DNA of 64,000 nt from Lytechinus pictus (Eukaryota): the NCBI RefSeq assembly GCF_037042905.1, contig NC_087247.1:21948001-22012000 (forward strand), given 5' to 3'. Positions 1,390 to 43,519 of this stretch are shown piece after piece. Numbering within the stretch: the stretch's first letter is position 1; every line of letters begins with the position of its first letter. The notes under the pieces are model-generated. The model did not search any database, was not told the DNA's origin, and saw only the letters and a program-made list of their open reading frames with translations. The translations under genes were made by a program, and so were the position numbers.

Positions 1390-1668
1390 TACTCCCTTCA
1401 GACTGACATGTCACGGCGCCAGCTGGAGTACGAAGCCCGCCAGCTTAGAGAGTTGATGCAAGAGAGACTGGGATCTATGGAGGACATCGCAGCAAGGCAT
1501 CGGATGCGCATGCAGAGGCTAAGTGCAATTGAATATGAGCTCAGGCAGGTTCAAGAACAACAGCAACATCAACAACAGCAGCAACATCAACAACAGCAGC
1601 AACAACATCAACAGCAGCAACTACAACAACAGCAACTTTTAGCCCAAGTATGGGAGCAGGGTGCACAG
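1390..1668 (+). CDS. APC: APC exon: coiled coil YSLQTDMSRRQLEYEARQ followed by a poly-Q tract
   Basis: Acceptor ctttag|TAC at 1389/1390 and donor CAG|gtatga at 1668/1669. Matches vertebrate FSLQTDMTRRQLEYEARQ. Confidence 0.93.
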
Positions 1669-7600: not shown

Positions 7601-10600
7601 GCCACCCCTTTACCAGATTCTCTCATGAATAGCCAGCAGAGAGCGCCTTCACCAAGCAATAGACTTCATGGAAATGTTGTGAATTCTCCTGAAACTCGTG
7701 ATGATCACTCCTTCCAAGAAGGGAAGACAAAAGAAAGTGAAGGTCAAATCACCACAAGTCAGCCTGGATCTGTCGAGAATAGTCCTGGGAAACCACATGG
7801 AGGAAGCAGGATAGCACAGGTAATGAAACTTCCTTCGACATAGCCAAAGTTCAACCATTCCTTATCTAAATACTCTATCTTCAAATTAAAACATTAGGAG
7901 AATTTCTTATTGAATATCTGAATCCATCTTAATGAATAATTTATAATAACAAATCAAATACGAAGCAGCATCGTTAGAATTCAAAAACTTGTCTCCAAAA
8001 GCTCCTAAATATCTATGGTCAATGTACAGAGCTTATGCTAATTACAGAATTGAAATTGAATTAATTCCTGGAATGCACCAAGTGCTGGAAGTAGCAGCTG
8101 GAGCTGAGGGTAATAGTAATAGAGCTCCTCTGAATAGATTTAAATAGATGGTGCTATAGAAATGGAAAAATAACCCTCTACCTCTCATTGAAAACAAGAG
8201 TAAGAAGCAGCATGACCATGACATCCTCATGATTTGAATTTTTTTCATTGATGATTATTTCAGAAGGCAAGAATGCATCTATTATTGATTTTCTTTTGTA
8301 TAATAATACTGGTATTAAATATTTGAACATAAAGTCAGTGTAATAGTAAATTGAAGTAGGTTTGATATGAATATTTATTTTTCCTTTTCAATATTTGTTT
8401 TATCTTGAATACAGATCATGCAAGAAGTAGCTCAAGCTGGTCTTCCAAATGACTCAAGCCAGGGCAGTGAGAGTCCACGTCGAGAGTCACTTGAAAGCAG
8501 GCTCCAGTCTAGAAATGGCCACCAACAAAAACCAACATGTCCTCGCTCAAGCTCTTTCACCCATATGCCACCAGAGGGTTCCAATCTTTCAAGTCGTTCC
8601 AACTCATACTCCTTTGGCTTTGATGGAGGGCAGGGCCTTGTCGCTAGGCGATCATCTACAGAAAGCATAAACAGTATTTCTAGCGATATTTTCCCAGCTG
8701 GTATCCATGAACGATTGGCGCAAAATCGATCTCAGATGGATCACTCTCAATCAGCGGACAGCTCTCTCAACATGCATGGGACTGGAAGGAACCTTCAGAA
8801 CAATGCATTGGTGCACTCTGCAGATGAGGCTTTTGGTACAAACATGGACTCTACAACAAACTATAGTTTAAAGTATTCTGAGGAAGATCTTCCACCAGGG
8901 ATACATAGCCCAAAGAGAACACCTCCCGAAGAGCATGGATGTAAAGAGGAAAACTCACAGCAAAGCAGCGGTGATGGAGAGCAGAATGAAGAGAATTCAT
9001 CCCAGCCATGTCAAAAGTGCAATTCACCACATAGACCTCGCGAAGGATTGGCCACAGGTAACTCTTACATGTCCAGTCAACACCAGGGAATATTTCCACA
9101 ACAGTATTCAGACCAGTCAGTATCTTCTCATCACAATGTCCTAGATACAATCCAAGGATCAAGTATGTACTCGAACATGGATAACAGTGAACCTTTCACA
9201 CAAGATGATGAGAGGCCAACTGATTTTTCTCAAAGATATGCAAATGATATGTCACATGGAGAGGATGCAGAAAGTTTTGGGTTTGTCCAGACAACTTTAG
9301 AGACCAACACAGGTGGGACTGTTTATATGAGTAGCGAGGAGCCAGAGGTGCGTGATAGTAGCTACAATGTTTCATCGAATCAAGAGATTCCATCAAGTTT
9401 GGTGTCTCAGTTTGGATCAGAGCATGGAGGATCACGACATTCGGTTGCATCAAGCCATCATGAGGAAGAAGAGTCACAACCATGCAGTCATGATGACAAC
9501 ACAAAGACATACTGTGTAGAAGGAACCCCCGGCCCAATTTCAAGATGTTCCTCACTCAGTTCACTTGATTTAAATGAGCTGAACGAGGATGAGAAAAGTA
9601 AAGATGACAGTGCTCATTCACCTGGTGATGACCTACAAACCACTACACCTCCAAATGAGCCAACCCCTGTAAAAATGACAAATAAGCAAGTTTTGCTGCA
9701 GCTCCCATCGGACGTTCACCACCATGATGAAGTCCAAGAAACTCCTCTGGTCTTTAGCCGATGCAGTTCAGTGTGTTCACTCAGTAGTGATGATGTGCCA
9801 GATATATGCGATGATGTAAGCTCAATTTATACCAACAGTCGTGCAGCTAGTGGTTTTGTGAGTCCGAGTGAATTACCAGATAGCCCCAGTGATACAATGC
9901 CACCCAGTCCTAGAAGAACATCGCAGGGTAATGTCAAGGAAGATATTCAAAATGCTCCTAAGCTTCCTGAAATGGAAGAAAAGCCCACAATGTATGCAAC
10001 TGAAGGAACACCCATTGACAATTCCTGTGCTACAAGCCTGAGTGCTTTGACAATTGACGGCGATGTCAAAGCTACAGTTGCAAAACGTCTCTTACCACCT
10101 GAAGGGAATGAGGGAAGTGAAGATGCTGGCAGTAAAGACAAAGAGAATGCAGATGAAAAGAACGTTGAACCAAGTGGGAATGACTTTTCAGAACAAGAGC
10201 AGAGTCTGTTAGATGAATGTATTAATGCAGCATTGCCAGTGAGAAGAAAGGGAATACCAAAGCCATCAAAATCTAAAAGCAAGAGAGATGTTACCAGCAA
10301 GAAGATACCTGTGAGTCAAAAGCCGTCAACTAGTAAGCACGTCAGTTTTGAGAAGTCAAATTCTGCTCAATCCACTGCCCTGCAGGATGTATCAAAGCCA
10401 TTTTGCACAGAGGACACTCCAGTGAACTTTTCTGCTGCTACTTCGCTCAGTGATCTAAGCATAGAAGACATTGAGATCGAGAGTTCATCAGATGGGAAAC
10501 TTATGATTACAAATCCAGACAGAAGTGCCATGGAGAAACCTAGTGGTATTGAATCAGATAATCAAGTGCAAACTTCAGGGGATCTTCTACATTACATGGA

Positions 10601-13600
10601 TGATGCCAGGTCTGAAACTAACTCTGTCACAAAGGAGGCAGAGGATTCCATGTTACAGGAGTGTATTAACTCTGCCATCCCAAGATCCAAATCTAGCAAG
10701 CCTCGTACATCACTACTTGCCAAACACAGATCACCCCGACACATTGGAAAGTTTAGATCACCGAAGGGAGTTGCACCTCGAAAGAGATTGCCAAGTACAG
10801 ATGTGCGTCACAAGAGTCCATCTCCCATCCCTGAGATGAGCTCAGATACCAGATCTACTTCAAGCCAAGAACGAGGGCAAGACTGGGTGAACAATCCGTC
10901 ACCTCCTCCTGATACTGTTACAACCTACTGCATGGAAGGAACACCAGGAATATCCAATGCTACATCCTTAAGTGACCTTACTTCTCCCATTGATTCCGAA
11001 GATGTCAATGGAAACATCACTTCTCAAAATTTACCTCAGAACAGAAGTACCTTAGGTGTTGGAGTCAGCATGGGGAGTACTCCATCTGATACACCCCGTG
11101 TTTTTGCAGTTGAAGGCACACCTATCAATTTTTCATGTAATGGTTCGCTAAGCTCATTAAGCTGTGATGAGGATGCCGACCTTGCTGAAGCTAAAGCTCA
11201 AATGAAAGAAGTTAGTAAAAGGAAACAAGCAGATGGAGGTTCAAGTAGACAGCAGACAATGATTCCCAAGCAGAGAACATCCTTCTCAAATCCCATTGAA
11301 CAGGTTCATAGTCCTGATAAAAAGTATTACAGCATGAATGATTATCATAATGCAGATGCTGCTAAGAGTGCAATGTCTCCTCTGGACTCTCCAAGAGTGT
11401 TTGCTGTGGAAGGTACCCCTGGTGTTATATCCAGGGCAGATTCACTCAGTTCTCTCAGTTGTGATGAAGAGGATGCATCACCACAACAAGCAGATGAACG
11501 TGGAACGGTAGAAAAAAGTGCAAAAGAGAGACTCGCTGAAAAGACACGGACGTCCAGGATAAGTGGTAACAGAATGAATCATCTTGGTGAAAGTTCTATG
11601 GCTATGAGGAGACTGAGCTCGGAGGAGGCACCTCTAAGCTACGCCGTTGAAGACACACCAACTTGCTTTTCCCACAATTCAAGTTTGAGTGCATTGAGTG
11701 ACAATGATGAAGAAGAGCGACCAGATCTCACTGAACAGTGGCAGGATGAAGAAAGTCAACAACAAAGGTCGACTGAGAGTGCCAATGGAATCAACAAGGA
11801 TTCCAGGAGAGTGTTTGCAACAGAGGACACCCCTGTTTGTTTTTCAAGAAACAGTTCTCTTAGTTCTTTGGATGCAGAATCTGATGGAGATGCTGCTAGT
11901 GAGCAGGCTTTGCTGGATGAGTGCATCATATCTGGCATGCCGCAATCAAAAGGCAAGAAACCTGTTAAGAAAATAAATGGCAAGGTCATTTCAGGTGGTC
12001 CATCTATGGAAGATGATGAAAGTTCTGCTACCATCAAGGAAAATGAATCAAAACCTGTTAGAAGGGGACCAAGAATCAGCAAACCATCAGATAGTGTGGA
12101 GGAGAAATCTGTAACTGAGGAAGAGGATGGCCCCAAAGGAATTAAAGGTGGGAAAAAGGTGTACCGAAGTCCCATTACTGGCAAAATACGATCTATCACA
12201 CCACCAAAGAGTGTTATGGCCCCAAAAAGTCCTGCAGCAACTAGAGGTGGCCTTGCTAAAGGAAGTCCCACTACATCAAGAGGAAGGGGTGCTATTCGAG
12301 GTGCCAGAGGTGGCCTTACTCGCAGTGCTTCTACAACTCCACCAAGGAGTGCAACCCCAACTGGTAGAGGAACCCCTCCTAGGACTACCACACCTCCTCG
12401 TACAACATCACCTATGACAGCAGGGAGGACCACTACGCCTCCAAGAACCACTTCACCAAGATCTGGAACTCCACCAAGGCTCACACCTTCACCAAAAGGA
12501 CCTAATGGAAATAAGAATATTACCCCTGTAAGAAATACTACAAATTCAGCCCGTAGCATCACACCACCAAGGCCGGTAAGGAAATCCTCCCTTGATTCTC
12601 AAAAAGATGGAGATGCCAAGAGTGAAACTTCTTCACGTAGGTCTTCAAAAGAAAGCATCAGCAATATCCCCAAACCTAGACAGATAAAAAACCCTAGCAA
12701 AACCTCTCCTAGCAGTTCAACCTCACCAAAGCCACCAACTGGTCGTGGCTCTCCTGCTGGAAAACCTCCACTCAGCACAAGTAGATCAGCAAGTCCAAAA
12801 TCAAAGATGCCGGTGCCTTCAAGATCAAACAGCCCTTCTACAAAGACAACTGGTTCTGTTGGCACTCCAAGAAAACCTGTGAACAAAAGCCCATCTACCA
12901 ACAAACCTGTCGATGACTCTACATTGGGTGATGAAGAATTGACATCACAAATGAAAAGCATTAGCTTAGAAAGTGATGGAGGTTCACCTGATTTAGACGA
13001 TGGTGATCGACCAGTGCTGCTCAAACAATCAACATTTACAAAAGATAGTGCATCACTCCCTGAACAAACTCCTGAAATGAATCCATTAAGTGGAGACGAG
13101 AAGGTTCTGTCTCCAGTGCAATCAGAAGAGGCTCCATCAGTGACTGAAAGTGAATCCAGTTTATCTATGTCTAAAGGTGGATGGAGAAAGACGAGCAGTG
13201 GTATCCAGGGGTCGCAAGAGGGTCAAAAGTCTTCCACTGGAAACAAAACAGTCAGTAAACCCACTGGTGTCTCAAAAATCACTCCAAAGAGGACTAATTC
13301 CCCAGGTCTTAGGTCACCTGCTACTAGATCTTCTTCCCCAGGTCAAAGGACAAATGCACCTGCAAAAAGGTCAGAGTCACCATCTAGAGTGTCTACTACA
13401 TCTCAAAGATCAGAATCTCCTTCCAGAGCATCAACAACCTCACAAAGCTCAGTGTCTAAGCAGAGGACCATCCCACAAACAAAGGGACCAGGGTCTACAC
13501 AAAGAAATAACTCTGCAACTTCCAAGATCAACTCAGGACTTCAGAAATCTGGAGGTCTGAGCAAAAGATCATCATCGCCATCAGGTGTGAAAACAAATCC

Positions 13601-15446
13601 AAATGTTAATGGAAATCGTTCCAGTACACCGCCAAAGTCGGCTGCCAGTAGACAAAATACAAGACCAGCAAAGCCTGGGAATACAGGAGTCAGAACAGGT
13701 CCTCAAACTACTAGGGCAGCATCTGCTAGTCCTAAACCCTCAGGTGCCTCTACAAGAGCATTACACAACAAACCAGCAAGTAGGCCTTCATCAGCTGAAG
13801 GACCAAGATCACCCGCTGTAAATAAATCATCTTCTGAGGAGACACCTTCACCACAAACACCATCAAAATTTGGTACATTCACTAAAAAGAAGGGCCAGTC
13901 GAGTATTGAAATCAGTAGCAAGAAAGAAAAGGGAGCATCTGGGGTGAGTGATAATGTGACTAAAAGTGATCTTTCGTCTGATGAACAACAAAATTCACAA
14001 CTGAAAGCTAAGGATCTTTGCAAAGAACTTAACATACCCGTGAAAAACTGTGGAGGTAAAATTGTGTCTCCAACACGTGAAACTGCAGAAGGTGATGGTG
14101 TTTGGATGAAAAGGCCTGAAGATGAGGTAAAGGACTGTGCATCCATCAGTATCAACTCTTCATCACGTCATAGTAGCTCATACAGTTTGAGTAGTATTTC
14201 TACCAATCATCAAGTTGGTAGCCTTTCTCGACAGAAATCAGCCCAGCCTGAATTACCTAGCTCAAATAAGTCACCAGCAGTCAATGCAAAGAGAAATATT
14301 TTTCCATCACTTAATAAAAACTCAAATTCCAAATCATCTAGTAAATCTAGTTTAGACTCATCAAAAAGTGGAGGTAAATCAACACCTAAATTAACATCTA
14401 AACAGAAGCATGAATCTGAAGAAAAAAATGAAGGGAAAAAGGAGAAAAAGGCAGATAAGAAGCGATTCTCTTTTCTCAAGTTGAAGATTGGTGGAAAGAA
14501 ATCGGATAGTGATAGTGAAGGAAAGGAAAAGAGCAAAGGGTTTTTCTCCAAGAAGGAAAAAAAGTCACCAAAAAAATTGAAGGTTCAGACCAAAGGCAAG
14601 ACAGAATCAGAGTCGTCCGCTGAGCAGGTCCTCCCCAGTCCTCCTCTGGCTGAACTAGAACCTGATCTTAACATTAGTGGGGCTGATCTCAGCTTTGACA
14701 GGCATCTGGATGAGCTAGAGGCTTGGAATAGTGACAATGATATTGACAAAGAAGAGATGCCTGATGAGTTTGTTGAATGGGATAGTGGTAGCGATATCAT
14801 GAAAGAAGAGATGCCAGAGGAATTCATTGAAAGCTGTTCAGAAGTAGATACTGATCCTGCTACTCCAATGAGTCCCGGTGTTACAACTGGATCAGTAGGA
14901 GGTGATATACAGATTGACCCAAACGGACAGCGGGGAGACTTCTCCCCACACTCTCAAACTGGTAGCCTTTCCCCAAACGGACTATCGGGGGACTGTATGT
15001 CCCCCGTAGATGAGGATGGTAATTCCATTGAAGCCGATGAGCAGTATTTTTACTGTGAAAATCGACTGAACTCTTTCATTCGTCTTGACGACAATAAAAG
15101 CGAAACAAGCGACACATTTCTTGAAGGAGAGTTGAGCATGCGTCGAAATGTCCAGAACCAGCGCAGCCGTAGCTTGTCAGATACTACCGTTGATCAATCA
15201 CCACATCGCCCTCAGAGATTGAAACTTCCCCAGAAACCATTCGGTATCCATCAGAATGACACCTCTCCTTCTTCCAACAATGTTGTACCTGTTTTGGTGT
15301 CACCCTATAACTATAGCCCAAATCCAAATCGGAAAGGCGAGATAGACACCAACTGTTCCGGGATGGGGTTTCACAAAGATGACAGTAGTCGAAGTAGTTC
15401 AGAGGTGGTTAGTCCCACTGGATCTACCAGAGTAACTACTGTTTAG
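1390..15446 (+). CDS. APC: Adenomatous polyposis coli protein, 5'-partial spliced CDS: join(1390..1668,2140..2775,3360..3477,4029..4259,5059..5166,6552..7819,8415..15446)
   Basis: Exons sum to 9672 nt (3223 aa + stop) with GT-AG introns and matching phases 0,0,1,1,1,0. Recognisable APC motifs: SLQTDMSRRQLEYEARQ, VYSLLSMLG.HD.DDM, MKLSFDEEHR, armadillo repeats (RRYAGMALTNLTFGD, LKSVLSALWNLSAHCTENKADIC), 15-aa and 20-aa beta-catenin repeats, SAMP-like repeats, basic domain and C-terminal PDZ ligand VTTV. Confidence 0.97.
2140..2775 (+). CDS. APC: APC exon: low-complexity linker ending SSVMSFGSS...QQLGVK
   Basis: Acceptor catttag|GCT and donor AAG|gtaaaa; open frame; the end matches vertebrate HLGTK|VEMVY. 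Confidence 0.88.
3360..3477 (+). CDS. APC: APC exon (VGFVYSLLSMLGSHDRDDMASTLLMMSRSADSCLAMRQS)
   Basis: Acceptor cctttag|GTT and donor G|gtaagg; conserved pre-armadillo segment. Confidence 0.95.
4029..4259 (+). CDS. APC: APC exon (GCIPLLIHILHG...RVLRLLEQIRSYC)
   Basis: Acceptor caccag|GT and donor G|gtgagt; conserved APC sequence. Confidence 0.95.
5059..5166 (+). CDS. APC: APC exon (PGPAMAALMKLSFDEEHRSAICHL); this frame is absent from the ORF track
   Basis: Acceptor ggcag|CA and donor G|gtaagg; hand translation gives MKLSFDEEHR, the start of the armadillo region. Confidence 0.93.
5200..5828. mobile_element. Palindromic MITE, Tc1/mariner-like, in an APC intron
   Basis: GTGTGAGTCAAAAAAATGCTTGACACCTCACAAATC... 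is mirrored by ...GATTTGTGAGGTGTCATGTTTTTTTTTACTCACACCG. The imperfect inverted arms run more than 200 bp, with TA on both flanks. Confidence 0.8.
6552..7819 (+). CDS. APC: APC exon encoding most of the armadillo repeat domain
   Basis: Acceptor tttacag|GT and donor CAG|gtaatg; GLHAIAELLQVD...SAALRNLMA is near-identical to vertebrate APC. Confidence 0.97.
8415..15446 (+). CDS. APC: APC giant terminal coding exon (15-aa and 20-aa repeats, CID, SAMP-like repeats, basic domain, PDZ ligand)
   Basis: Acceptor atacag|ATC; 7032-nt open frame ending TRVTTV-TAG. Contains NYSLKYSEE, repeated E(G/D)TP..(F)S..SSLSSL, SPSELPDSP, KGIKGGKKVY and RPVLLKQSTF. Confidence 0.97.
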   Translation: MMQEVAQAGLPNDSSQGSESPRRESLESRLQSRNGHQQKPTCPRSSSFTHMPPEGSNLSSRSNSYSFGFDGGQGLVARRSSTESINSISSDIFPAGIHERLAQNRSQMDHSQSADSSLNMHGTGRNLQNNALVHSADEAFGTNMDSTTNYSLKYSEEDLPPGIHSPKRTPPEEHGCKEENSQQSSGDGEQNEENSSQPCQKCNSPHRPREGLATGNSYMSSQHQGIFPQQYSDQSVSSHHNVLDTIQGSSMYSNMDNSEPFTQDDERPTDFSQRYANDMSHGEDAESFGFVQTTLETNTGGTVYMSSEEPEVRDSSYNVSSNQEIPSSLVSQFGSEHGGSRHSVASSHHEEEESQPCSHDDNTKTYCVEGTPGPISRCSSLSSLDLNELNEDEKSKDDSAHSPGDDLQTTTPPNEPTPVKMTNKQVLLQLPSDVHHHDEVQETPLVFSRCSSVCSLSSDDVPDICDDVSSIYTNSRAASGFVSPSELPDSPSDTMPPSPRRTSQGNVKEDIQNAPKLPEMEEKPTMYATEGTPIDNSCATSLSALTIDGDVKATVAKRLLPPEGNEGSEDAGSKDKENADEKNVEPSGNDFSEQEQSLLDECINAALPVRRKGIPKPSKSKSKRDVTSKKIPVSQKPSTSKHVSFEKSNSAQSTALQDVSKPFCTEDTPVNFSAATSLSDLSIEDIEIESSSDGKLMITNPDRSAMEKPSGIESDNQVQTSGDLLHYMDDARSETNSVTKEAEDSMLQECINSAIPRSKSSKPRTSLLAKHRSPRHIGKFRSPKGVAPRKRLPSTDVRHKSPSPIPEMSSDTRSTSSQERGQDWVNNPSPPPDTVTTYCMEGTPGISNATSLSDLTSPIDSEDVNGNITSQNLPQNRSTLGVGVSMGSTPSDTPRVFAVEGTPINFSCNGSLSSLSCDEDADLAEAKAQMKEVSKRKQADGGSSRQQTMIPKQRTSFSNPIEQVHSPDKKYYSMNDYHNADAAKSAMSPLDSPRVFAVEGTPGVISRADSLSSLSCDEEDASPQQADERGTVEKSAKERLAEKTRTSRISGNRMNHLGESSMAMRRLSSEEAPLSYAVEDTPTCFSHNSSLSALSDNDEEERPDLTEQWQDEESQQQRSTESANGINKDSRRVFATEDTPVCFSRNSSLSSLDAESDGDAASEQALLDECIISGMPQSKGKKPVKKINGKVISGGPSMEDDESSATIKENESKPVRRGPRISKPSDSVEEKSVTEEEDGPKGIKGGKKVYRSPITGKIRSITPPKSVMAPKSPAATRGGLAKGSPTTSRGRGAIRGARGGLTRSASTTPPRSATPTGRGTPPRTTTPPRTTSPMTAGRTTTPPRTTSPRSGTPPRLTPSPKGPNGNKNITPVRNTTNSARSITPPRPVRKSSLDSQKDGDAKSETSSRRSSKESISNIPKPRQIKNPSKTSPSSSTSPKPPTGRGSPAGKPPLSTSRSASPKSKMPVPSRSNSPSTKTTGSVGTPRKPVNKSPSTNKPVDDSTLGDEELTSQMKSISLESDGGSPDLDDGDRPVLLKQSTFTKDSASLPEQTPEMNPLSGDEKVLSPVQSEEAPSVTESESSLSMSKGGWRKTSSGIQGSQEGQKSSTGNKTVSKPTGVSKITPKRTNSPGLRSPATRSSSPGQRTNAPAKRSESPSRVSTTSQRSESPSRASTTSQSSVSKQRTIPQTKGPGSTQRNNSATSKINSGLQKSGGLSKRSSSPSGVKTNPNVNGNRSSTPPKSAASRQNTRPAKPGNTGVRTGPQTTRAASASPKPSGASTRALHNKPASRPSSAEGPRSPAVNKSSSEETPSPQTPSKFGTFTKKKGQSSIEISSKKEKGASGVSDNVTKSDLSSDEQQNSQLKAKDLCKELNIPVKNCGGKIVSPTRETAEGDGVWMKRPEDEVKDCASISINSSSRHSSSYSLSSISTNHQVGSLSRQKSAQPELPSSNKSPAVNAKRNIFPSLNKNSNSKSSSKSSLDSSKSGGKSTPKLTSKQKHESEEKNEGKKEKKADKKRFSFLKLKIGGKKSDSDSEGKEKSKGFFSKKEKKSPKKLKVQTKGKTESESSAEQVLPSPPLAELEPDLNISGADLSFDRHLDELEAWNSDNDIDKEEMPDEFVEWDSGSDIMKEEMPEEFIESCSEVDTDPATPMSPGVTTGSVGGDIQIDPNGQRGDFSPHSQTGSLSPNGLSGDCMSPVDEDGNSIEADEQYFYCENRLNSFIRLDDNKSETSDTFLEGELSMRRNVQNQRSRSLSDTTVDQSPHRPQRLKLPQKPFGIHQNDTSPSSNNVVPVLVSPYNYSPNPNRKGEIDTNCSGMGFHKDDSSRSSSEVVSPTGSTRVTTV

Positions 15447-29600: not shown

Positions 29601-31242
29601 AGGGACCTCTAGAGTTATTTACATTAGATTATTCAAATCATTCACTGCACAAAAGTCAAGATAACAAACCTGTAAAGAGCTTTACATCTCCTAAAAACTC
29701 TGAAACCCATTGATTTTTCAATTAAAAGTCTGTAAAACCCCCACTTGGGAGAAAAGAATTGGCCCTCGGAGCTTGGGACAAATTAATGCAATGTAAATAT
29801 TTTGCACCTATGTGTGAACTCGGGAAGGAGAAGGGGAGGGGAGAGGAGAAGAGGAAGAAAAGCATGATATTCGAAACTGGCTAGAATGTTGGGAATTTTT
29901 TGGGGATCATATATATAGACTGACAGGAGAATGATGAAAGTATTTCTCATTCATATTTTCTTATATAATTTGTTTACATCAGCTTGCTTTTGGTGTAGAC
30001 TTGGGCTAAGGTAAGTAAGATTTTAAAGTCCAAAAAAATCATTCATTGTTTCTCAGAGGGTATAGTCAGATAGAGCGCATTATGTGATAGGGCTTATAAA
30101 AGTGATAATAAATGTCAGGATACAAAGAGATACAAAGAGATAAACAAAGTTTTGACATCAACTTACATCACTTTCAGCTGTAAAGGCTTTAGCTGCTGTT
30201 CCACCAAGTTTCAAGATCTTTTCTCCTTCTTCTAAGGCTCCTTTAGTTTCTAGGCACAAAGAAGAAAGGATCACAATAGATAGATGGCAATAACGACGAT
30301 CAATTTTCGCACTAGTTTACACCCAGCCTACACTAGTATCCACCCACTGATAGATGACCCTATTTGCACTTTCTAAATAGAGATAACTGGCTTTCCTTAC
30401 ATTATTTGTTACATATGCATTCAAAATATTGTATACTTTATCGACATTGTGATTATTTGGGGAAATGTGACTGATTTTAAGGAGAAATAAACAAACCATT
30501 TACCCCCCCCCCCCTAAAAAAAGGAAGATTGATGATGATTATCCCAAACCAAACAATTTCTCTTCTTATGAGGCTTTATTATATTTTGCTGTGTCATAAG
30601 AAGCCCCGGCTATTTTTTTCTTCTTGTTGTTTCAATTTAAATTCTGTTTACATTTCATAGAAGCTTCAGTTTTCTATTATAAGTTCTTGTCACTTTTTAG
30701 AAGTACTTTTGTTGAAATAAATGTTGCATTTCATCACATTTCTTTCTCTGTATTTGATTTTGTTTATGTTTATTATAATGTATACTTGGTATTCATTCAA
30801 CTTCCAACAATGTTTTGTTTAGCCTTAGGCCTACTTTGTTTTTGCTCTTTACACATTTCTTTATTTTCTTTAATTTCATTCTTCTTTATAATTTTCCTTT
30901 CCATGCCATTGTTACACCTCTTTCTCTAATTCCATAAATTCTTCATATGGAATAATATGTTTTTCATCCTCATGCTCCTAAAATAATTTTCACGTTCACA
31001 TTACTCTCCATTCTCAATCAACAACCATCATAAACTATAGGATTCAAACAGTATGCAATATAGAAGCAGTGAGATTCAAGGCATTTTCTGATACTGTATT
31101 CTCATTTCAATTAAGTATATTTTTATTTGTTTCCTTTTTATAAATCTTCTTTTCAAGAAACTTATTTGTATTATATTTTGTGCAAAATTTAATATTCAAA
31201 CAATTCAACATATCGAATGAGACAGAAAAAAATTAAACCTTA

Positions 31243-34200
31243 TAGTCTAGGAGATAGGGGGCTTTATTCAGAATTTTTGGTGGGGAAGGTTTGACAAGCT
31301 TATCCGGGGTAAAACTGATTCCAAAAATGTCACTCTTATTGACCGTACTCACGCCATTTTGGTCATTTTGGCCAAATTTTGACCAAAATTGACCATTTTG
31401 ACCACTCTTTGGAAAATGGTCCCTTAACAGACTGCTTTTGTAGCCACATGCAATTAAAAGGGTCTATCTTAAGTAAAAATGCACACAAATTTCAGATAAA
31501 GTGCTTTCATTTGCCAAATCACAATAGCAGTGGTCATTTTGGCCATAATTTGGACAAAAATGACAATTTTCATGATTTTTTGGCCGAAATGTGTTACAAA
31601 TATTGATCAGAGCTACGACTGGATGTTTTTAAGAAATCCACATTTATTTTCAAAATGTGCGCTGGATCATAACCATCAACCTCATGTAATTTATCCATCA
31701 GTTTTGACCTATGAGGGTCATTTTGGGTACTTTAGACATAACTGACCATTCGCGCAGTTTTGCATTATTAACTGCTCAAATAGGCAGGAAATTGAGGTCT
31801 TTAGCATGTTTTATTTCTTCCCTTATAAAATGAGAATGCATTTAAATGTCCTACTTGTGTAGAATTTTATGCTGATTCCTAATATATCAGTCTTAATGAC
31901 CCTATTTAACAGTTTAAGGTCATTTTGGCCACTTATGGCCCTTAAAATGACCAATGGCATCAGTTCAATTTATCCAAAAAAACTTTGAATGTTACCAGAA
32001 TCGTTACAAGGGCATACTGTGACACCTAACATTGGTGTATTAATCCTTTAAATTTAACATCTCAAACGTATTTTGACCTCATGCAATTTATTCCATCAGT
32101 TTTGACCTATGAGGGTCTTTGGCGTACTTTAGACACAACTGACCATTCGCGCAGTTTTGCATATAATAAACTGCACATAGACAGGAATTTGAGGTCTTCA
32201 GCGTGTTTTATCTTCTTCCCATATAAAATGGAAATGCATTCAAAGGTTCATCTTATGTAAAATGTGATGCTGATTCCAAATATATCAGTCTTAATGACCC
32301 TATTTAACATCTTAAGGTTATTTTGGCCACTTATGGCCCTTAAAATGACCAAATGGCATCAGTTCAATTTATCCAAAAAAACTTTGAATGTTACCAGAAT
32401 CGTTACAAGGGCATACTGTGACACCTAACATATTGGTGTATTAATCCTTGAAATTTAACATCTCAAACGTATTTTGACCTCATGCAATTTATTCCATCAG
32501 TTTTGACCTATGAGGGTCATTTGGCGTACTTTAGACACAACTGACCATTCACGCAGTTTTGCATAATAAACTGCACATAGGTCTTCAGCATGTTTTATCT
32601 TCTTCCATATAAAATTGAAATGCATTCAAAAGTCCATCTTGTGTAAGTTTGATGCTGATTCCAAATATATCAGTCCTTATGACCCTATTCAACAGCTTAA
32701 GGTCATTTTGGCCAATTATGGTCCTTAAAATGGCCAATAACATCAGTTCAATTTATCCAGAAATACTTCGAATGTTACCAGAATCTTAACAAGGGTGTGC
32801 TGTAATACCCAACACTGGTGAATGAATCCTTAAAATTGAGCACCCCCAAAGTTGACTACCTTGGTCATTTTGGCCACCTTGACCCCCCCCCCCCCCCCCC
32901 CCCCCCCGGCCAGCCCTGCTAATTGTGTATGTTAATTCAGGTTATATCGAACATGGTGAGGAGAAATTTTGGATTGCGTTAATATTAGCATCAATTATTG
33001 TTAAATGGGGAAGTTTGAAAGCTTCTTGGTGGAAATCAATGAAATTATTCCACACAGACCAGTGTTATTGGTATAACTATTGGACCCTCTGGTCATTTTG
33101 ACCACGTTTCTCTCAATATTGACCAGTGACCATGGACCCTAGGAATCTCCAATTAGTGGAGGGATCAGCTAAGAGAGAGACCACACATGCTTTGATGAGT
33201 CAAAAAGGGCTCAAATGCTGGTCAGTATCATTATCAGCATGAGCTACCAATAATCGGTGAAGAGTGTTGATAATTGTGATAAAATCCTTTACATCGAGCA
33301 TACATAAGGTTGTTTGACCATGCACCGTGGTCATTTACATGATTTTAGCCACCTTGACCACACAGTAAATATTTATGTAAACTTCACATATATGGGGCAG
33401 CAAATTCAGGAATGAGACATTTTAGCATCATTTACATGTTATGTTAAGACACTTTTCTAGATTAATGTAGATTAATGATTCCAAATATATTAGTCTCAAT
33501 GACCATTTATGAGCTAGTGGTCATTTTGGTCGCTTTTGGTCCCGAAAATGACCAATCACATTTGCATGTATCAAAGAGGATTCAAATGTTGTTGTCGCTC
33601 CGTATTGTTAATAAGATGTATTATATCAATTATTGATTTCAATATGATATGACTAATAGCACATTATCAAAATTTTGAAACCAATTTGGCAATTTTGACT
33701 ATTTATTGCATGTATGACTTTTGTAAATAAACATGACAGGAGCAATTGTGGAAATGCGTTCAATCCCTTTCGATTGGAAATATCACAAGCTCACCTTGAG
33801 TAAAAAATTGTGCCAAATACCTCACCACTGTGTAATATGGCCCAAGTGGTCATTGAGTAGCCATAACATCATTCCCTCCTTTTTAATTTAAATATACAGA
33901 TAAATATATTCTAGAGGAAGGCACTAATCCTGAATTCAAAGGTGCGTCATTACAAAGCTATTGGTCAAAGTGAATTTCACGAATAGATTTGACCATGATG
34001 CATTTTTATTACCTTTGCCATTTTGTATAATGTTTCACAAACCTCACATTGGCATGATTGGTAAAGTTGAAAGTGGAAAATTTGCCCTAAATTGTTAAAG
34101 AGTGACCAAATTCGGCACAGATAATAATTTCATATAGAGAATGTGTTTTATTACCCAGTACGTCTTCAAAAGAAGGGTAAATTTGCTGCTCACCAATCAT

Positions 34201-37101
34201 GCCAATGTGAGGTTTGTGAAGCACTGTACAAGAAAAAACAAAGATGGTAAAAATGAATGATAGTCAAAACTCTTTGTGAACTTCACTGTGACATATTTTG
34301 CTTTGTAATGATTCTCAGTACAACTTGACTTTAAAGAAGGAACATAATGCTGGCTATTTAGGAACATACAGTGATCAAAGGGGCCACAGTAGACAGTCAC
34401 ATGATATTTGGCACAATTTTTACTCAAGGTGATCCTTTAATATTTCCCATCAAAAGGGATTGAACGCATTTCATCATGTTCATAGACCTACAATTGCTGC
34501 TAAGTCATGTTTATTTCAAAATTCACACATTGGATAAACGGTCAAAGTAACCAAAATGGTCACATTTTGATTATGTACTATTAGTAATATCATATTGAAT
34601 TAAATAATCTGTCACTGATTATGATTGATACAACAAATCTTACAAAAATATAGAGCAAGAACATTGGAATACTTTTGATACATGTAATTGTCATTGCTAA
34701 TTGTAGGGACCAAAAGTGAAAATGACCACTAAGTAGTCATTAAGACTGATATATTCTAAATCATTGTATTAATCTGGTGCAGAAAGTTTTTGTAATATGT
34801 CCTATCTAACATCATTCTTGAATTCGTTCCCATGAATTACAAAATGGTCAATGTGCCTGAAATCATGAAAATGACCAAAGTGCATGGTCAAACAACCTTA
34901 TATATACTTGATGTAAAGGTTTTTATCACATTCATTAAACTCTTGATTATTGGTGTAGTGGCTCACGCTGAAAATTATATTACGCAACATTTGAGCCCTT
35001 TTTAAATCAAATAATGTGTGGTCACTAGAAATTATTGAGGAAAAGTGATCAAAATTACCACAAATTCCAATAGTTCGGCCAATAACACTGATTCATATGG
35101 AATCATTGCATTGATTTTCACCCAAAAGCTTTCAAACTTTTCCCATTTAACAATAATTGATGCTAATATTAACACAATCCTGAATTGTCTCCTCACTATG
35201 TTCACGAAAGGCTAATTTAGTATACACATTGGGCAGGGGACAATCTGGCCAAAATGACCAAGGTTGTCAAAATATTTTTGGGACACTCAATTTAAATGAT
35301 TAATACACCAGTGTTAGGTGTCACAGCACACCCTTGTAACGATTATAGTAACATTCAAAGTATTTTTGGATAAATTGAAGTATTGAACAGATGGTATTAG
35401 TCATTTGGGGGCCAAAAAGTGGCCAAAATGACCATGGGGTCCTTAAGACTGACATATTGGGAATCAGCATGAAATTCTACACAAGAACGACCTATGCATC
35501 ATTCCCATTTTATAAAGGAGGAAGATAAAGCACACTGAAGACCTCAAATTCCTGCCGATTTGCACAGTTATTATGCAAAATTGCACGAATGGTCAGTTAC
35601 CCAAAATGGCCCTCATAGGTCAAAAGTATAAACTAATGATATAAATTCCATGAGGTCAAAATACTTTTGAAATGTTCATTTCAAAGGATTAATACACCAA
35701 TGTTAGATGTCACTTAGATGTCACAGCACATCCTGGTAACGATTCTGGTAACATTGAGGTCTTTTGGATAAATTGAACTGATGTTATTTGTCATTTTTAT
35801 GGCCATAAGTGGCCAAAATGACAATAAGGTGTTCAATAGGGTCATTGAGGCTGATATATTTAGAATCAGCATAATATTCTATACAAGATGGACATTTGCA
35901 TTCCCATTTTATAAGGGAAGAAGATAAAACACGCTGAAGACCTCAAATTCCTGCCTATGTGCGAATGGTCAGTTATGTCTAAAGTACCCCCAAATGACCC
36001 TCATAGGTCAAAACTGATGGAATGAGGTCAAAATAATTTTGAGATGTTCAATTTAAAGGATTAACACACCCCAATGTTAGGTGTCGCAACACACCCTTGT
36101 AACGATTCTGGTAACGTTCGAAGTATTTGGGGTAAAATGAACTGTATATGTGCACTTTATTATGCAAAACGTCGTGAATGGTCAGTTATGTATAAAGTAC
36201 CCCCAAATGACCCTCATAGGTCAAAACTGATGGAATGAATTACATAAGGTCAAAATACTTTGTGAGATGTTCAACTTAAAGGATTAACACACCAATGTTG
36301 GCATGATTAGGTGTCGCAGCACACTTGTAATGGTTCTGGTAACGTTCAAAGTATTTGGGGGTAAAATTAACTGATGTCATTGGCCATTTTAAGAGCCATA
36401 AGTGGTCAAAATGACCACAAGCTATTAAATAAGTTTATTATGACTGATATATTTGGAATCAGCATAAAATTCTACACAAGTAGGACATTTAAATGCATTC
36501 TCATTTTATAAGGGAAGAAGATAAAACATGCTAAAGACCTCAATTTCCTGCCTATTTAAACAGTTAATAATGCAAACTGCGCGAATGGTGAGTTATGTCT
36601 AAAGTACCCAAAATGACCCTCATAGGTCAAAACTGACGGAATAAATTACATGAGGTTGATGGTTATGAATTAGCGCACATTTTGAAAATAGATGTGGATT
36701 TCTAAAAAACATCCAGTCGTAGCTCTGATCAATATTTGTAACACATTTCGGCCAAAAAAATCATGAAAATTGTCATTTTTGGCCAAATTATGGCCAAGAT
36801 GACCACTGCTATTGCGATTTGGCAAATGAAAGCACTTTATCTGAAATTTGTGTGCATTTTTACTTAAGATATACCCTTTTAATTGCATGTGGCTACAAAA
36901 GCAGTCTGTTAAAGGACCATTTTCCAAAGAGTGGTCAAAATTGTCATTTTTGGTCAAAATTTGGCCAAAATGACCAAAAATGGCGTGAGTACGGTCAATA
37001 AGAGTGACATTTTTGGAATCAGCGCACAATTTTACCCCGGATAAGCTTGTCAAACCTTCCACACCAAAAATTCTGAATAAAGCCCCCTATCTCCTAGACT
37101 A
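31243..37101. mobile_element. 5.86-kb non-autonomous foldback DNA transposon (TAG...CTA ends, TTA TSD; Academ-like or Harbinger-like)
   Basis: TAGTCTAGGAGATAGGGGGCTTTATTCAGAATTTTTGGTG at 31243 is the reverse complement of the end at 37101. TTA lies at 31240-31242 and 37102-37104. Inverted homology continues to ~34062/34192. Confidence 0.92.
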
Positions 37102-39130
37102 TTAAAGATTAACCGTTGTCATGAACACATTCATGTCCAGAAAGAGTATCCTTGCCCAAATAATATGATGCTATTTTCATGTGGGATATGTTCATTGCCT
37201 GGCATGGATAACCAGTAGGAAATCTTTGCTGAGTTGTAAAATTAGATTTTACATCACATCCTGATTACCGGGTATCAAAGCATTTGCAATGTAAAAATTA
37301 TTTAGAATTATTTGGGAGAAGTTACATTTTAATAGTTGTGTGTTCATGATGTGTTTTGTCAGTAACTTTGTGATTTTTTAGGTGAAATTTTTTAATGACT
37401 CACTCGGGACATCAAAATAGCATATAAGATAAGATATAAGATATTTTTAAATTCTACAACTTGAGAAATAATAATACATTGTATAGCGCACTTTCCATCT
37501 TGATTAGATGCTCAAAGTCAAGGCGCTTCAGAGCAGAACAAAACAAAAAACTATTTACATATAATACATGTCTGAACTATAAGTCAATGTCTATCAAAAA
37601 TCAATCTTGAATCATATTATCTTTAAAACAGGTTTGACAATTGATTTTTTTTTTCTCCAAAGAACGTTTCACATGTAATATGATTTAATGATGTAATATG
37701 AATAAGCATGTCACATGAATAACAGTCCACACGAATAGCAAATAAAATATGAAGCTGACAAATGGAACAGCATGCATGGGAACATGAGTGTCATATGTGA
37801 CAATGAATTTCACATCTAAACATTTGTAAATATGAAGATAAAATACACATAGAAGATATTAATACACATGACTGAAAAAAGGAGTGAGAAAAGGGTCAGG
37901 TGACTGTGCATTGCAACAGAAGCAGCAGGAATCTATCTGTTATAGCAACAATAACTAAACACATTCTCAAAGCAAACTTTTTTTTTTTTAATCTTCAATT
38001 TATGTGAACAAATGAATATTTTCATACATGATAACAAAAATACATGTACACAGCCCTTCAAAAGCTTGGGAATACCTGTATCTAAATCATTGAAGCACTA
38101 TAAACTACATCATAGCAAAGAAAATTGCTCAGGTACATGCAGCGCAACTATGACCTTTGACCTGCAGGCAAGATTTTGTAAGAAATCTTGTTTGAATCAC
38201 TTTTCTTGGCCCAAATAGAAATCCTAATGTCAGGTTTGCTACTGAAAATGTAAAAGCAAAAAAAAAAACAGTAATAAAAATGCTGCTGGAGGAAATCTAT
38301 TCCAATTTTACATAAAATAATTTTAAAACTCTATTTCTTTTTGTGATTGAAACTGAAGATATTTCCCTCGGTATTAAAATAGTCAATCACTAAGACAAAC
38401 TACACAGATCTTATCAAAGAGATCAGATGCAGTTTAAGTTCAATTTTGATAATAAAAACAGTAGCGCAGAATGCTAAGATTATTACACCTGTACTACCTG
38501 CAGTATTAACATGTAAACATGTAGATATGTTTTTAATTGCTAAAAGGAAACTCAATAAACTTTTGCTACCATTACTTTATATGGTAAAACTCAGGGTTAT
38601 TTCTTTTCCTCATTTTACCCTGTACAAGAACTCTCATAGAAATAGACTTAGAAATTGATTCTTCGGCATTTGTTTCTTCTCACTACTATCTCATGCTGAG
38701 TTTTCATAATAATACATGGCCCAGCATTTGGGCCCGGCCTTTGGACAGCCTCTGACAGGCTTTCAGGCATTTTACAGGTCTGCTGGTCAAAGGTGGTAAC
38801 GGCCATACCTGATCAAATTTTGATGCAGTCAGGTTTAAAATACTCCTAGATGGTTGAAATCATTGACAAACTTTCATGATCATAGGATGCAATACTGGTA
38901 AATAAACTAAAATCTACCAATTCTATCAATATTAAAGGTGTTCCTAATCATAAGGGGAGTGTATAGTATCAAAAAAAAAAATTCCTTCAGTTAACAAAGA
39001 TTTTATTTTGCACACCTCGCAAAGTACATGTCATTTCAAAGTGTGAAACAGTAATATAGCATAAGTACAGAACCAAATTATTTTCCTTCCCATTTCTTCT
39101 GTTTGAATTTTAGTCTGTCAATATTATATA

Positions 39131-41654: not shown

Positions 41655-43519
41655 AGGTGTACTCTGAGCTGAATATATCTAACAATGAAGTAAAATCCAC
41701 AGAGCAAAATGCTGAAAATGTCATCAAAGTTTGATAACAATAACTTTAAATTTTAAAGTTTTATTTATTTATTTATTTATTACGTCTTATTTTACCAGGG
41801 TGACTCTGTCAGTGGTTCAAACACTGTTATACTTAGAGGCCCTGGAATACAATAACAAAAAATACATTAGAAAACAATTACAGAACATGCACATAAAACT
41901 TATTGTCATCTACATATAGTTCAGTGGAGTGGAATCAGCAACCACATGGTGTCAGGCACGTGAAATTGTTTATTGGTATACTAAAGTTGGTTAGAAATAT
42001 ATATATGTAAGATATATTTTACTGTATTAGGTGAGTTAGTCATTTACTAAAGGAATTTCATGAGGGGTGTTACCTAGTTTTGGGTCACTTTCCAGAATCT
42101 TGCAGTAAATGTGTGTTTAGAAGGTGCCTGCCTTACATCATGCGGTAAACGATTCCACTCCACTGCACCAACATGGGAAAAAGCTTGTTTGCCAGAATTT
42201 GTCCTTGCTTTTGGTATCAAAAGTCCATCAGTTATTGCAGCTCTGGTTCTGTAACTATGAATAGAATTCGCTTTGTCAAATAAATTGGTCAGGTAATTTG
42301 GTGCCTGACCATTTATAGCTTTGTATACTAGCTTACATCTTTGCATTTTCCACTGATTTTCAATTGATGTCCAGTTCAACTGACTCAAAACATAATCTGT
42401 GGAAGTACGTGTACCAACTCCAAGGACAATTCGTGCCATTCTTTTATGTTGTTTCACAAGCGACTCTTTGGTCGCAATTGCACAATTTGACCAAGCAGTG
42501 CTGGAGTAGTCGAACAATGGCAATACCAGAGCATTTGCTAGCATATTGATACTATCTAGTGGTAAAAATTGTTTCAATCTTCTCAATAGAGCTAATCTAG
42601 GTCCAATTGTTTTACTAACATGTTGTAAGTGATCCTTCCAATTTAGGGCAGGATCTAATATTACACCTAAGTATTTGTAGCTGTCTACTTGCAGTACTAC
42701 ATGATTGTCCAAATGTAATGAAAGGGGTCTGTTCGTACTTGCTAATTTCTGGGGTGTTCCAAAAATCATAAATTGTGTCTTAGTGGGGTCTAATCTTAGT
42801 CCATTATTATTAACCCAGTTACTGATGTGTTTCAAATCTTCGTTAAGTACAGTTTCGAGATCTTCAATTTTCTTTGCACTGTAAAAGATAATAGTATCGT
42901 CAGCGTACATCATCACACTACTTTTTGAGGTAACTTTAGGAAGGTCGTTCACCATAATCGAGAATAGGAGGGATCCGAGTATTGATCCCTGCGGTACCCC
43001 GGTTACTATAGTACCCCATGTGGACTCGGCATCCCTTACAGTTAAGCAATATTTTGAGGGAAAAAAGTTATATTCGGATCATGAATATTCATTAGGTGGG
43101 CTGATGATGTCACATCCTCACTTTCCTTTTTCTTATGTTATTACATAAATGTCCTTTTTATCATATGGCAAGTGTGAATGATATATCTTCCTTATAATGA
43201 AATAATTTGCAGCAATGAATATCTAATGCACTATTAAATCAGTTGTTAATCCTTTTTTCTTTTAGTTCTTGATGGAAAAAATTGAATAAACCTAATTTCA
43301 TACAATAAAATACCAAAGAACAAGTGGGGATACCATATCATCAGTTTGCTCATTGAATAATCATGAAGACATGCCCAGAACTGTTTCACCAAAAGAATGC
43401 AAATCTTCAAAATGCCTTCACTTTGTTATTCCTTGTCCAATTTCGATCATATTTTCAGTGCTTTGTCTGATTTTTCTTTATATGTTCAAATTGTGTTATC
43501 TTCAGCCTCGAGTACCCCT
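41655..43519. mobile_element. Kolobok-like MITE split by the LINE insertion
   Basis: TTAA|AGGTGTACTCTGAGCTGAA ... TTCAGCCTCGAGTACCCCT|TCAA; the halves (41655-41760 and ~43043-43519) flank the LINE. Confidence 0.65.
41761..43042 (-). mobile_element. 5'-truncated non-LTR retrotransposon (CR1-group, Crack/L2-like): RT C-terminal half, 3' UTR and (TAAA)n tail
   Basis: Uninterrupted frame GVPQGSILGSLLFSIMVNDL...MYADDT...YKYLGVILD...WNRLP to the stop at 42074. The 3' end reads CCAGGGC...CCCTGGTAAAATAAGACG(TAAA)n. Confidence 0.92.

What the first reader, a model, noticed from the sequence alone, without database searches (positions are those of the whole stretch)
31243..37101. Giant 5.86-kb foldback element: ~2.8-kb arms, ~130-bp spacer, no coding capacity
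Seen: the whole element is an imperfect palindrome (arms 31243-~34062 and ~34192-37101) with TAG...CTA termini and an exact TTA 3-bp TSD, so it inserted as one unit. No transposase ORF is present. Established: YR..YR termini with 3-4-bp TSDs and long TIRs describe Academ elements, TWA TSDs describe PIF/Harbinger, and modular foldbacks are known as Drosophila FB and sea urchin TU elements. Inference: a possibly undescribed non-autonomous foldback family, mobilised in trans, able to form a kb-scale cruciform or dsRNA.
Basis: partly seen in the sequence, partly recalled or inferred. Interest (0 to 1): 0.7.

Follow-up and report, generated by a model that had tools for sequence, protein, structure and literature searches.

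The report
Non-coding foldback transposon, 3-bp footprint
This 5.86-kb mirror-image stretch is one copy of a young family of about 75 protein-less "jumping genes" that insert as whole units and duplicate three bases of the target. It is a solid new example of a known kind of element, and the enzyme that moves it was not found.

Summary
Window 31243-37101 is an imperfect whole-element palindrome with TAG...CTA ends, a TTA duplication on both sides, and no ORF over 130 aa or Pfam hit.

It is not an assembly artefact. The genome holds about 149 such ends, or about 75 copies, mostly 5.5-6 kb. In 14 of 16 copies with both ends read, a perfect 3-bp target duplication flanks the element. The two arms keep their differences from copy to copy, so the element moves as one unit.

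The TSDs vary (TTA, CTA, TAG, CTT, ATC, TCC, GAC...). They do not follow the TTA/TAA rule of PIF/Harbinger.

Each arm has a 436-bp terminal domain, about 2.6 tandem units of ~398 bp, and an inner domain. Each arm carries five copies of a ~75-bp module containing a GGTCATTTT...AAAATGACC palindrome. These are the likely transposase-binding sites.

No autonomous partner was found. Every longer copy examined holds only nested Gypsy or LINE elements or non-coding DNA.

The superfamily is open. AcademX-like is my best guess (about 0.4). I could not reproduce that tie.

The scan has already reported several foldback families in this genome. This is a new member of a known kind.

The parts
31240..31242 (.). 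Left target-site duplication, TTA
   Evidence: Read directly. It matches 37102-37104. A 3-bp TSD is perfect in 14 of 16 copies.
31243..37101 (.). Whole foldback element, 5859 bp, ends TAGTCTAGGAG...CTCCTAGACTA
   Evidence: Self-alignment. The same ends occur in all other copies. It is colinear at 95% with the copies on C11 and C6 through the centre.
31243..31678 (+). Left terminal domain. Its first 72 bp occur only at the ends. The first binding-type module lies at 31315-31395.
   Evidence: Unit map and module alignment. It is 96-97% identical to the right terminal domain.
31679..32852 (+). Left tandem-repeat domain: a partial unit, two full ~398-bp units (31815-32212 and 32213-32599), then a partial unit
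   Evidence: Direct-repeat families D1-D8 and D15, with spacing of 385-402 bp. BLAST of the unit against the element.
32883..32907 (+). C25 homopolymer at the inner edge of the left repeat domain. There is no mirror G-run in the right arm.
   Evidence: Tandem Repeats Finder and homopolymer scan.
32908..34062 (+). Left inner domain, with a degenerate module at 33476-33590
   Evidence: It is 74-82% complementary to 34192-35265. Module hit.
34063..34191 (.). Central unpaired spacer, 129 bp
   Evidence: It is the gap between the innermost inverted matches, 33947-34062 and 34192-34311. It is conserved in the C11 copy.
34192..35265 (-). Right inner domain, with a degenerate module at 34660-34763
35266..36656 (-). 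Right tandem-repeat domain: full and partial ~398-bp units in inverted orientation
   Evidence: Direct-repeat families D9-D19 and unit map.
36657..37101 (-). Right terminal domain, with a module at 36943-37035
37102..37104 (.). Right target-site duplication, TTA
   Evidence: Read directly.

Best explanation
The stretch is one copy of a young, non-autonomous class II (cut-and-paste, TIR) transposon family whose master copy was already a ~5.9-kb imperfect foldback.

Shown:
- The genome holds about 75 copies.
- Insertion makes a 3-bp target duplication with no fixed sequence.
- The whole palindrome moves as one unit.
- The element does not code for protein.
- Each arm carries five copies of a ~75-bp module, the first 72 bp from the end. 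The module reads CTGATTCCAAATATATCAG, then TGACC, then a GGTCATTTT-N15-17-AAAATGACC palindrome.

Inferred:
- A transposase supplied in trans binds these iterated palindromic modules as a dimer or multimer.
- It pairs the two ends, cuts at TAG/CTA, and integrates with a 3-bp stagger.
- The arms grew by tandem amplification of a ~398-bp unit that contains a module.

The transposase source is not identified. My best guess is an AcademX-type enzyme, at about 0.4. The rest of the probability is shared by PIF/Harbinger, CMC, Zator and an undescribed superfamily. The element lies between genes, about 15.8 kb downstream of the last APC exon. Nothing shows a host function.
For: The palindrome and its exact ends are confirmed.

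Copy number:
- The terminal 25-mer with up to 2 mismatches gives 75 forward and 74 reverse hits, against 0 for the reversed control.
- The exact terminal 14-mer gives 100 hits against 4 for the control.
- The terminal 458 bp matches 40 scored places at 90-98% identity on at least 15 contigs.

TSDs: perfect 3-bp TSDs in 14 of 16 copies, namely TTA, CTA, TAA, TAG, CTT, ATA, AAA, ATC, TAC, TCC, GAC, GTC, TTT and ATA.

Movement as a unit:
- In a tree of the terminal 560 bp, arms group by homologous arm across copies. Examples are ours_L with C6b_R, ours_R with C6b_L, C7_L with C6a_L, and C7_R with C6a_R. Three of these groupings have support of 95/80 or better.
- Our copy is colinear at 95% with the C11 copy through the spacer.

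No coding capacity.

Module:
- Ten copies align, and the invariant columns lie in the module.
- The local palindromes fold with z-scores of -2.3 to -4.4.
- GGTCATTTT occurs 18 times in the element and 0 times in the other 58 kb of the window. TGACC occurs at 11.9 per kb against 1.5 per kb.

Academ lean:
- AcademX makes 3-4-bp TSDs (PMC10045372).
- A second foldback family of this genome (L059) has ends TAGTCCGGG... and a 3-bp TSD. It shares TAGTC and 10 of the first 14 bases with ours.
Against: - No autonomous partner was found. Longer copies hold only Gypsy or LINE elements or non-coding DNA.
- None of the top 150 DDE_Tnp_4 hits or the 12 Transposase_21 hits lies within a listed pair of ends.
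- Pfam XPG_I, XPG_N and XPG_I_2 scans gave only host-like exons and a tandem pair of ASTE1-like genes. The Academ nuclease reported in earlier notes was therefore not reproduced.
- Academ and Zator transposase cores have no Pfam model (PMC5751038). Their absence here cannot be judged.
- The match to the second family (7 of the first 11 bases) fails Repbase's rule for placing non-autonomous elements in the same superfamily, which allows at most 1 mismatch in positions 1-11 (PMC4455052).
- That second family uses different internal motifs.
- Binding of a transposase to the modules is inferred only.
Confidence: 0.85

Rival explanations
1. It is a PIF/Harbinger-derived foldback, a giant Tourist-like element moved by one of the genome's many Harbinger transposases.
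For: - This copy's TSD is TTA.
- The TSD length is 3 bp.
- 13 of the 14 perfect TSDs have A or T in the middle.
- Harbinger is by far the most abundant 3-bp-TSD superfamily here, with at least 150 DDE_Tnp_4 hits out of 402 candidates.
Against: - PIF/Harbinger TSDs are TTA or TAA, with 14-25-bp TIRs (PMC2213677). Only 2 of 14 TSDs here fit; the others include CTT, ATC, TCC, GAC and GTC.
- No Harbinger hit lies between a pair of family ends. The one neighbour, at C20:802008, lies outside the copy next to it.
Confidence: 0.12
2. It is a CMC (CACTA/Chapaev) non-autonomous element with iterated subterminal repeats.
For: - The TSD is 3 bp with no fixed sequence.
- It has arrays of subterminal repeats.
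- Transposase_21 genes with open frames of 650-914 aa exist in the genome.
Against: - The ends are TAG...CTA, not CAC...GTG.
- No Transposase_21 hit lies near any family end.
Confidence: 0.1
3. It belongs to Zator or to a not yet described superfamily that makes 3-bp TSDs. The partner is either lost from this assembly or invisible to Pfam.
For: - Zator makes 3-bp TSDs (PMC10045372).
- Zator and Academ cores lack Pfam models (PMC5751038), so my scans cannot see them.
- No partner of any kind was found.
Against: - The ISAzo13 profile gave nothing, though its controls also gave nothing, so this is weak.
Confidence: 0.3
4. It is an assembly artefact or a local inverted duplication, not a mobile element.
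For: Long palindromes are a known failure mode of assemblers. No reads could be laid on the stretch.
Against: - The same structure with the same ends occurs at dozens of loci on at least 15 contigs.
- Each locus has its own 3-bp TSD and unrelated flanks.
Confidence: 0.01

Closest known systems
Foldback elements with modular arms: Drosophila FB, D. virilis Tetris, sea-urchin TU (PMC4079207)
   Same: - Long inverted arms built of an outer flanking domain, a tandem-repeat domain and an inner part.
- No coding capacity.
- The partner is unknown in most copies.
- Tetris has the same three-part arm plan (an outer flanking domain of up to 866 bp, then ~220-bp tandem repeats) and also seeded a satellite.
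   Different: - Those elements make 8-10-bp TSDs and are placed in Mutator. This family makes 3-bp TSDs.
- The unit here is ~398 bp.
- The arms here meet at a 129-bp spacer, so nearly the whole element is the palindrome.
AcademX DNA transposons (Kapitonov and Jurka 2010; Kojima 2020, as cited in PMC10045372)
   Same: - TSDs of 3-4 bp.
- YR...YR ends (TA...TA here).
   Different: - No Academ transposase or XPG nuclease was found with these ends or anywhere in the genome by Pfam XPG scans.
- I did not find foldback derivatives of Academ described in the papers searched.
The 4.7-kb foldback family of the same genome
   Same: - A whole-element palindrome with no coding capacity.
- A 3-bp TSD (CAT).
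- Its end starts TAGTC, and 10 of its first 14 bases equal ours.
   Different: - No other sequence similarity, and different repeated motifs.
- It is much younger and more numerous, at 99-100% identity with 919 candidates.
- It fails Repbase's positions 1-11 rule, with 7 of 11 matching.
PIF/Harbinger Tourist-like elements
   Same: A 3-bp TSD. This copy's TSD is TTA.
   Different: The family's TSDs are not TTA/TAA. The arms are kilobases long rather than 14-25 bp. The ends do not begin with G.

Membership tests
Class II TIR (cut-and-paste) transposon, non-autonomous | Terminal inverted repeats with the same ends in many dispersed copies | tested here: met
   About 149 ends, against 0 for the control. 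Ends are identical in all copies read.
Class II TIR (cut-and-paste) transposon, non-autonomous | Target-site duplication of constant length flanking each copy | tested here: met
   A perfect 3-bp TSD in 14 of 16 copies. The chance value is 1 in 64 per copy.
Class II TIR (cut-and-paste) transposon, non-autonomous | No transposase gene in the element | tested here: met
   The largest ORF is 130 aa and there is no Pfam hit. Extra DNA in longer copies is Gypsy, LINE or non-coding.
Foldback-type elements (structural class) | Very long inverted arms with internal tandem repeats, able to fold back on themselves | tested here: met
   Arms of about 2.8 kb, ~398-bp tandem units, and a 129-bp spacer.
Mutator/Foldback superfamily | TSD of 8-10 bp | tested here: not met
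   The TSD is 3 bp. The 8-10-bp value is from PMC4079207.
PIF/Harbinger | 3-bp TSD of sequence TTA or TAA | tested here: not met
   The length fits, but only 2 of 14 TSDs are TTA or TAA. The criterion is from PMC2213677.
PIF/Harbinger | A partner encoding a DDE_Tnp_4 transposase with the same ends | tested here: not met
   None of the 150 scored hits lies inside a listed pair of ends. The neighbour on C20 lies outside its copy. Only 150 of 402 candidates were scored.
CMC (CACTA/Chapaev) | Ends 5'-CAC...GTG-3' | tested here: not met
   The ends are TAGTC...GACTA. That CMC ends begin with CAC is from my own knowledge.
CMC (CACTA/Chapaev) | TSD of 2-3 bp without a fixed sequence | tested here: met
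AcademX | TSD of 3 or 4 bp | tested here: met
   The TSD is 3 bp. The criterion is from PMC10045372.
AcademX | An autonomous partner encoding an Academ DDE transposase and an XPG-type nuclease | tested here: inconclusive
   XPG_I, XPG_N and XPG_I_2 scans found only host-like exons and a tandem ASTE1-like pair. The Academ core has no Pfam model (PMC5751038). Earlier notes report such elements in this genome, but I could not locate them.
AcademX | Repbase rule for non-autonomous elements: same TSD length, and positions 1-11 of the end equal to a classified element with at most 1 mismatch | tested here: not met
   Against the only candidate at hand (L059), 7 of 11 positions match. The rule is from PMC4455052. 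L059's own Academ status was not verified.
Zator | 3-bp TSD, and a transposase related to ISAzo13/TP36 | tested here: inconclusive
   The TSD fits. PF07592 found nothing, but its controls also found nothing.

The most novel reading that the evidence does not exclude
This family, together with the 4.7-kb TAGTCC family and other palindrome-armed elements noted in this genome, may form a lineage of foldback derivatives within a 3-bp-TSD superfamily, either AcademX or an undescribed one. I found foldbacks described only for the Mutator and P superfamilies. In this lineage, arrays of short palindromic binding modules would have replaced all coding sequence. Half-elements could also seed multi-kb tandem arrays.
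Probability: 0.3. Interest if true: 0.45.

Novelty: new member of a known kind. Interest (0 to 1): 0.3.

Why it matters
Most foldback transposons studied belong to Mutator, with P as the known exception. A well-documented foldback family with 3-bp TSDs widens the set of transposases that can move kilobase-scale palindromes.

The family is also a clean system for study. It has about 75 young copies, defined ends, and five conserved palindromic modules per arm. That makes it suitable for asking how such elements are recognised and how they avoid being destroyed as hairpins.

Long palindromes of this kind also break chromosomes and confuse assemblers, so an annotated family helps curation of this genome. 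On its own it is an ordinary repeat. It touches no gene, and the scan has already described several foldback families here.

Tried and rejected
1. Autonomous partner among long copies. Pairs of 6.5-20.4 kb (C2, C6b, C3, C3c, C6c, C8, C7b, C16, C9) hold Gypsy pol/gag, LINE EN/RT or non-coding DNA only.

2. Ends with a different interior. L007, L012, L020 and L028 diverge 565-715 bp from the end, but their interiors are unrelated to each other. These are separate nested insertions.

3. Places that match the exact terminal 14-mer but were not in the 25-mer listing. Seven are diverged family ends and three are chance matches. One, at C3:7362619, keeps only 19 bp of the end with nothing behind it.

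4. Coordinates of Pfam hits against coordinates of ends. I did this for Harbinger, CACTA, XPG_I, XPG_N, XPG_I_2 and ISAzo13, with no association.

5. The 729-aa XPG_N ORF at C2:66.70M. It is one of a tandem pair of ASTE1-like host genes, not a transposon gene.

6. It is not among the 40 scored hits out of 919 candidates.

7. Dyad-symmetric target sites. Flanks show 55 of 192 symmetric matches, against a mean of 3.2 per 12 for mismatched pairs of flanks. Only the C6c copy sits in a palindrome.

8. Nested ends. The first 72 bp of the element are not repeated inside the units. Only the subterminal module is repeated.

There is therefore no test of an empty site, of long-read support for this copy, or of RNA.

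10. The papers on Academ (Kojima 2020) and on superfamily catalytic domains (Yuan and Wessler 2011) are not held.

After that I fetched only small stretches.
Full report
OBSERVATION

A self-comparison of window 30000-38500 shows that 31243-37101 is one imperfect palindrome.
- The outer 940 bp of the arms (31243-32184 against 36142-37101) align at 91% over 965 positions, with blocks at 96-97%.
- A middle zone made of ~398-bp tandem units pairs at 76-85%.
- The inner zone pairs at 74-82%, down to 33947-34062 against 34192-34311.
- This leaves a 129-bp spacer at 34063-34191.

The ends read TAGTCTAGGAG... and ...CTCCTAGACTA. TTA stands on both sides, at 31240-31242 and 37102-37104. The largest ORF is 130 aa, and none of the five ORFs of 60 aa or more matches Pfam at E<=1.

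A MOBILE FAMILY, NOT AN ARTEFACT

The window is G000:C3:21948001-22012000 of an 812-Mb assembly. Earlier notes of this scan call it the sea urchin Lytechinus pictus. I did not verify the species.
- The terminal 458 bp match 40 scored places at 90-98% identity on at least 15 contigs, out of 275 candidates.
- The terminal 25-mer with up to 2 mismatches occurs 75 times forward and 74 times reverse, and never as the reversed control.
- The exact 14-mer occurs 100 times against 4 for the control.
- That gives about 75 copies.

Ends pair up mostly at 5.5-6.0 kb. Deleted copies are 1.5-5 kb and longer ones 6.5-20 kb.

In 14 of 16 copies with both ends read, the three bases outside the ends are a perfect direct repeat. 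They are TTA, CTA, TAA, TAG, CTT, ATA, AAA, ATC, TAC, TCC, GAC, GTC, TTT and ATA. The flanks are otherwise unrelated. This excludes misassembly and a merely local inverted duplication.

IT MOVES AS A WHOLE

In a maximum-likelihood tree of the first 560 bp of 18 arms, arms group by homologous arm across copies and not by copy. The groupings are ours_L with C6b_R, ours_R with C6b_L, C3b_L with C4_R, C7_L with C6a_L, and C7_R with C6a_R. Three of these have support of 95/80 or better.

Our copy is colinear with the C11 copy at 95% from position 1 to 4178, through the spacer. It is colinear with the C6b copy in reverse orientation at 95%.

The left/right differences were therefore already present in the master element and are inherited. 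The 5.9-kb foldback is the transposing unit. Terminal domains differ by about 3% between copies and whole elements by about 5%, so the family is young but not brand new.

ANATOMY

Each arm has three parts:
- a 436-bp terminal domain;
- a tandem-repeat domain, which on the left is a partial unit, two full units at 31815-32212 and 32213-32599, then another partial unit;
- an inner domain of about 1.15 kb.

A C25 run at 32883-32907 has no mirror in the right arm.

A ~75-bp module is present five times per arm. The first copy is 72 bp from the end, one sits in each unit, and one sits in the inner domain. It holds nearly all the invariant columns in an alignment of the ten copies. The module reads CTGATTCCAAATATATCAG, then TGACC, then a local palindrome GGTCATTTT-N15-17-AAAATGACC. 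That palindrome folds better than shuffled sequence, with z-scores of -2.3 to -4.4.

GGTCATTTT occurs 18 times in the element, largely oriented with respect to the nearer end. It occurs 0 times in the other 58 kb of the window. TGACC is eight-fold enriched. The outermost 72 bp are not repeated inside, so there are no nested ends.

I read the modules as iterated transposase-binding sites. That is an inference from position, iteration, symmetry and conservation.

WHICH TRANSPOSASE

No copy examined encodes one. Extra DNA in long copies is a Gypsy pol/gag (C2, C7b), LINE endonuclease or RT (C6b, C3, C6c), or non-coding sequence (C8, C3c, C16, C9).

Ends whose interior differs from ours 565-715 bp in (L007, L012, L020, L028) have interiors unrelated to each other.

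Of eleven exact 14-mer sites that were not in the 25-mer listing, seven are diverged family ends, three are chance matches, and one keeps only 19 bp of the end.

Whole-genome Pfam scans gave:
- at least 150 DDE_Tnp_4 hits;
- 12 Transposase_21 hits;
- four XPG_I hits and seven XPG_N hits that look like host exons;
- nothing for XPG_I_2;
- nothing for ISAzo13.

None lies inside a listed pair of ends. The single long XPG_N open frame (729 aa, C2:66.70M) is one of two tandem ASTE1-like genes.

These scans have limits.
- Only the best candidates are scored.
- Academ, Zator, Sola, Kolobok and others have no Pfam model for their catalytic core (PMC5751038).

SUPERFAMILY REASONING

A 3-bp TSD narrows the field to PIF/Harbinger, CMC (CACTA/Chapaev), AcademX and Zator. 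The TSD lengths for AcademX and Zator come from PMC10045372.
- Harbinger requires TTA or TAA (PMC2213677). Only 2 of the 14 perfect TSDs fit, although 13 of 14 have A or T in the middle.
- CMC ends begin with CAC (my own knowledge). These begin with TAG.
- Mutator-type foldbacks make 8-10-bp TSDs (PMC4079207).

I fetched it (L059). Its ends read TAGTCCGGGTTATAA... and its TSD is 3 bp, CAT. It shares TAGTC and 10 of the first 14 bases with ours. There is no other similarity, and its repeated motifs differ.

The shared TAGTC start has a chance value of about 1 in 1000 for one comparison. It is a pointer towards a common superfamily. It fails Repbase's rule of at most 1 mismatch in positions 1-11 (PMC4455052).

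My estimates are AcademX-like about 0.4, Zator or undescribed about 0.3, Harbinger about 0.12, and CMC about 0.1.

FUNCTION AND CONTEXT

The element lies about 15.8 kb downstream of the large last exon of an APC homologue (8418-15446 on the + strand; APC_r, SAMP and 15-aa repeats). It is 2.4 kb upstream of a stretch that another note calls a pogo-type pseudogene.

I saw no sign that it sits in a transcript. Hairpin RNA, small RNAs, empty alleles and long-read support for this particular copy all remain untested. Target sites show no general dyad symmetry.

VERDICT

This is a new member of a known kind. The scan has already reported several foldback families in this genome, including one with the same TAGTC start.

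Noticed in passing
G000:C8:40248388-40280750, C8:24429729-24438105 and C37:501205-517898 (loci L039, L040): One arm of the element (about 2.3 kb, ending at the true terminus) plus about 6 kb of other DNA forms an 8.3-kb unit. The unit is repeated head to tail at least 5, 2 and 3 times at three places. The two C8 arrays are 99.7-99.96% identical in opposite orientation. The 6-kb part holds two ~780-bp direct repeats at 93% identity, 4.4 kb apart, which may be LTRs. This looks like a macrosatellite born from half a foldback element.
   Followed up: partly
Loci L002, L007, L012, L020, L028, L030; the equivalent of window 31808-32033: Nested insertions or breaks cluster 565-790 bp from the element's ends. 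Six of eight breakpoints seen in the first 1.96 kb of 28 arms fall in this 225-bp zone. The C6b copy carries LINE pieces in both arms, both pointing inward, at sites roughly 80-100 bp apart in arm coordinates (my estimate from the coordinates).
   Followed up: partly
L038 (G000:C6:10072541-10080450): This copy inserted at the exact centre of a 12+12-bp perfect palindrome (AAGTGAAGAGAG-GTC-CTCTCTTCACTT), probably the middle of another hairpin element. Other copies show no such symmetry.
   Followed up: yes
G000:C3:7362619-7362632 (L045, L056): The first 19 bp of the family's end (TAGTCTAGGAGATAGGGGG) stand alone. There is no further homology, no inverted partner and no long ORF within 10 kb. 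It may be a remnant of a deleted or rearranged copy.
   Followed up: partly
window 6392-7843 and 8418-15446 (+): These are two large exons of an APC (adenomatous polyposis coli) homologue. One is 483 aa with Armadillo repeats. The other is a 2342-aa last exon with APC 20-aa repeats, a SAMP motif and the 15-aa motif.
   Followed up: no
G000:C2:66699862-66707237 (L058): A tandem pair of intron-less ASTE1-like genes of 729-732 aa (XPG_N plus XPG_I_2), 70% identical to each other. One of them has an in-frame TGA.
   Followed up: partly
G000:C3:49577344-49592781: A copy of the 4.7-kb TAGTCC foldback family lies only 4.3 kb from a copy of this family.
   Followed up: no
window 42074-42955 (-): A 293-aa ORF with the C-terminal half of a reverse-transcriptase domain lies inside the stretch that another note calls a pogo-type pseudogene.
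   Followed up: no
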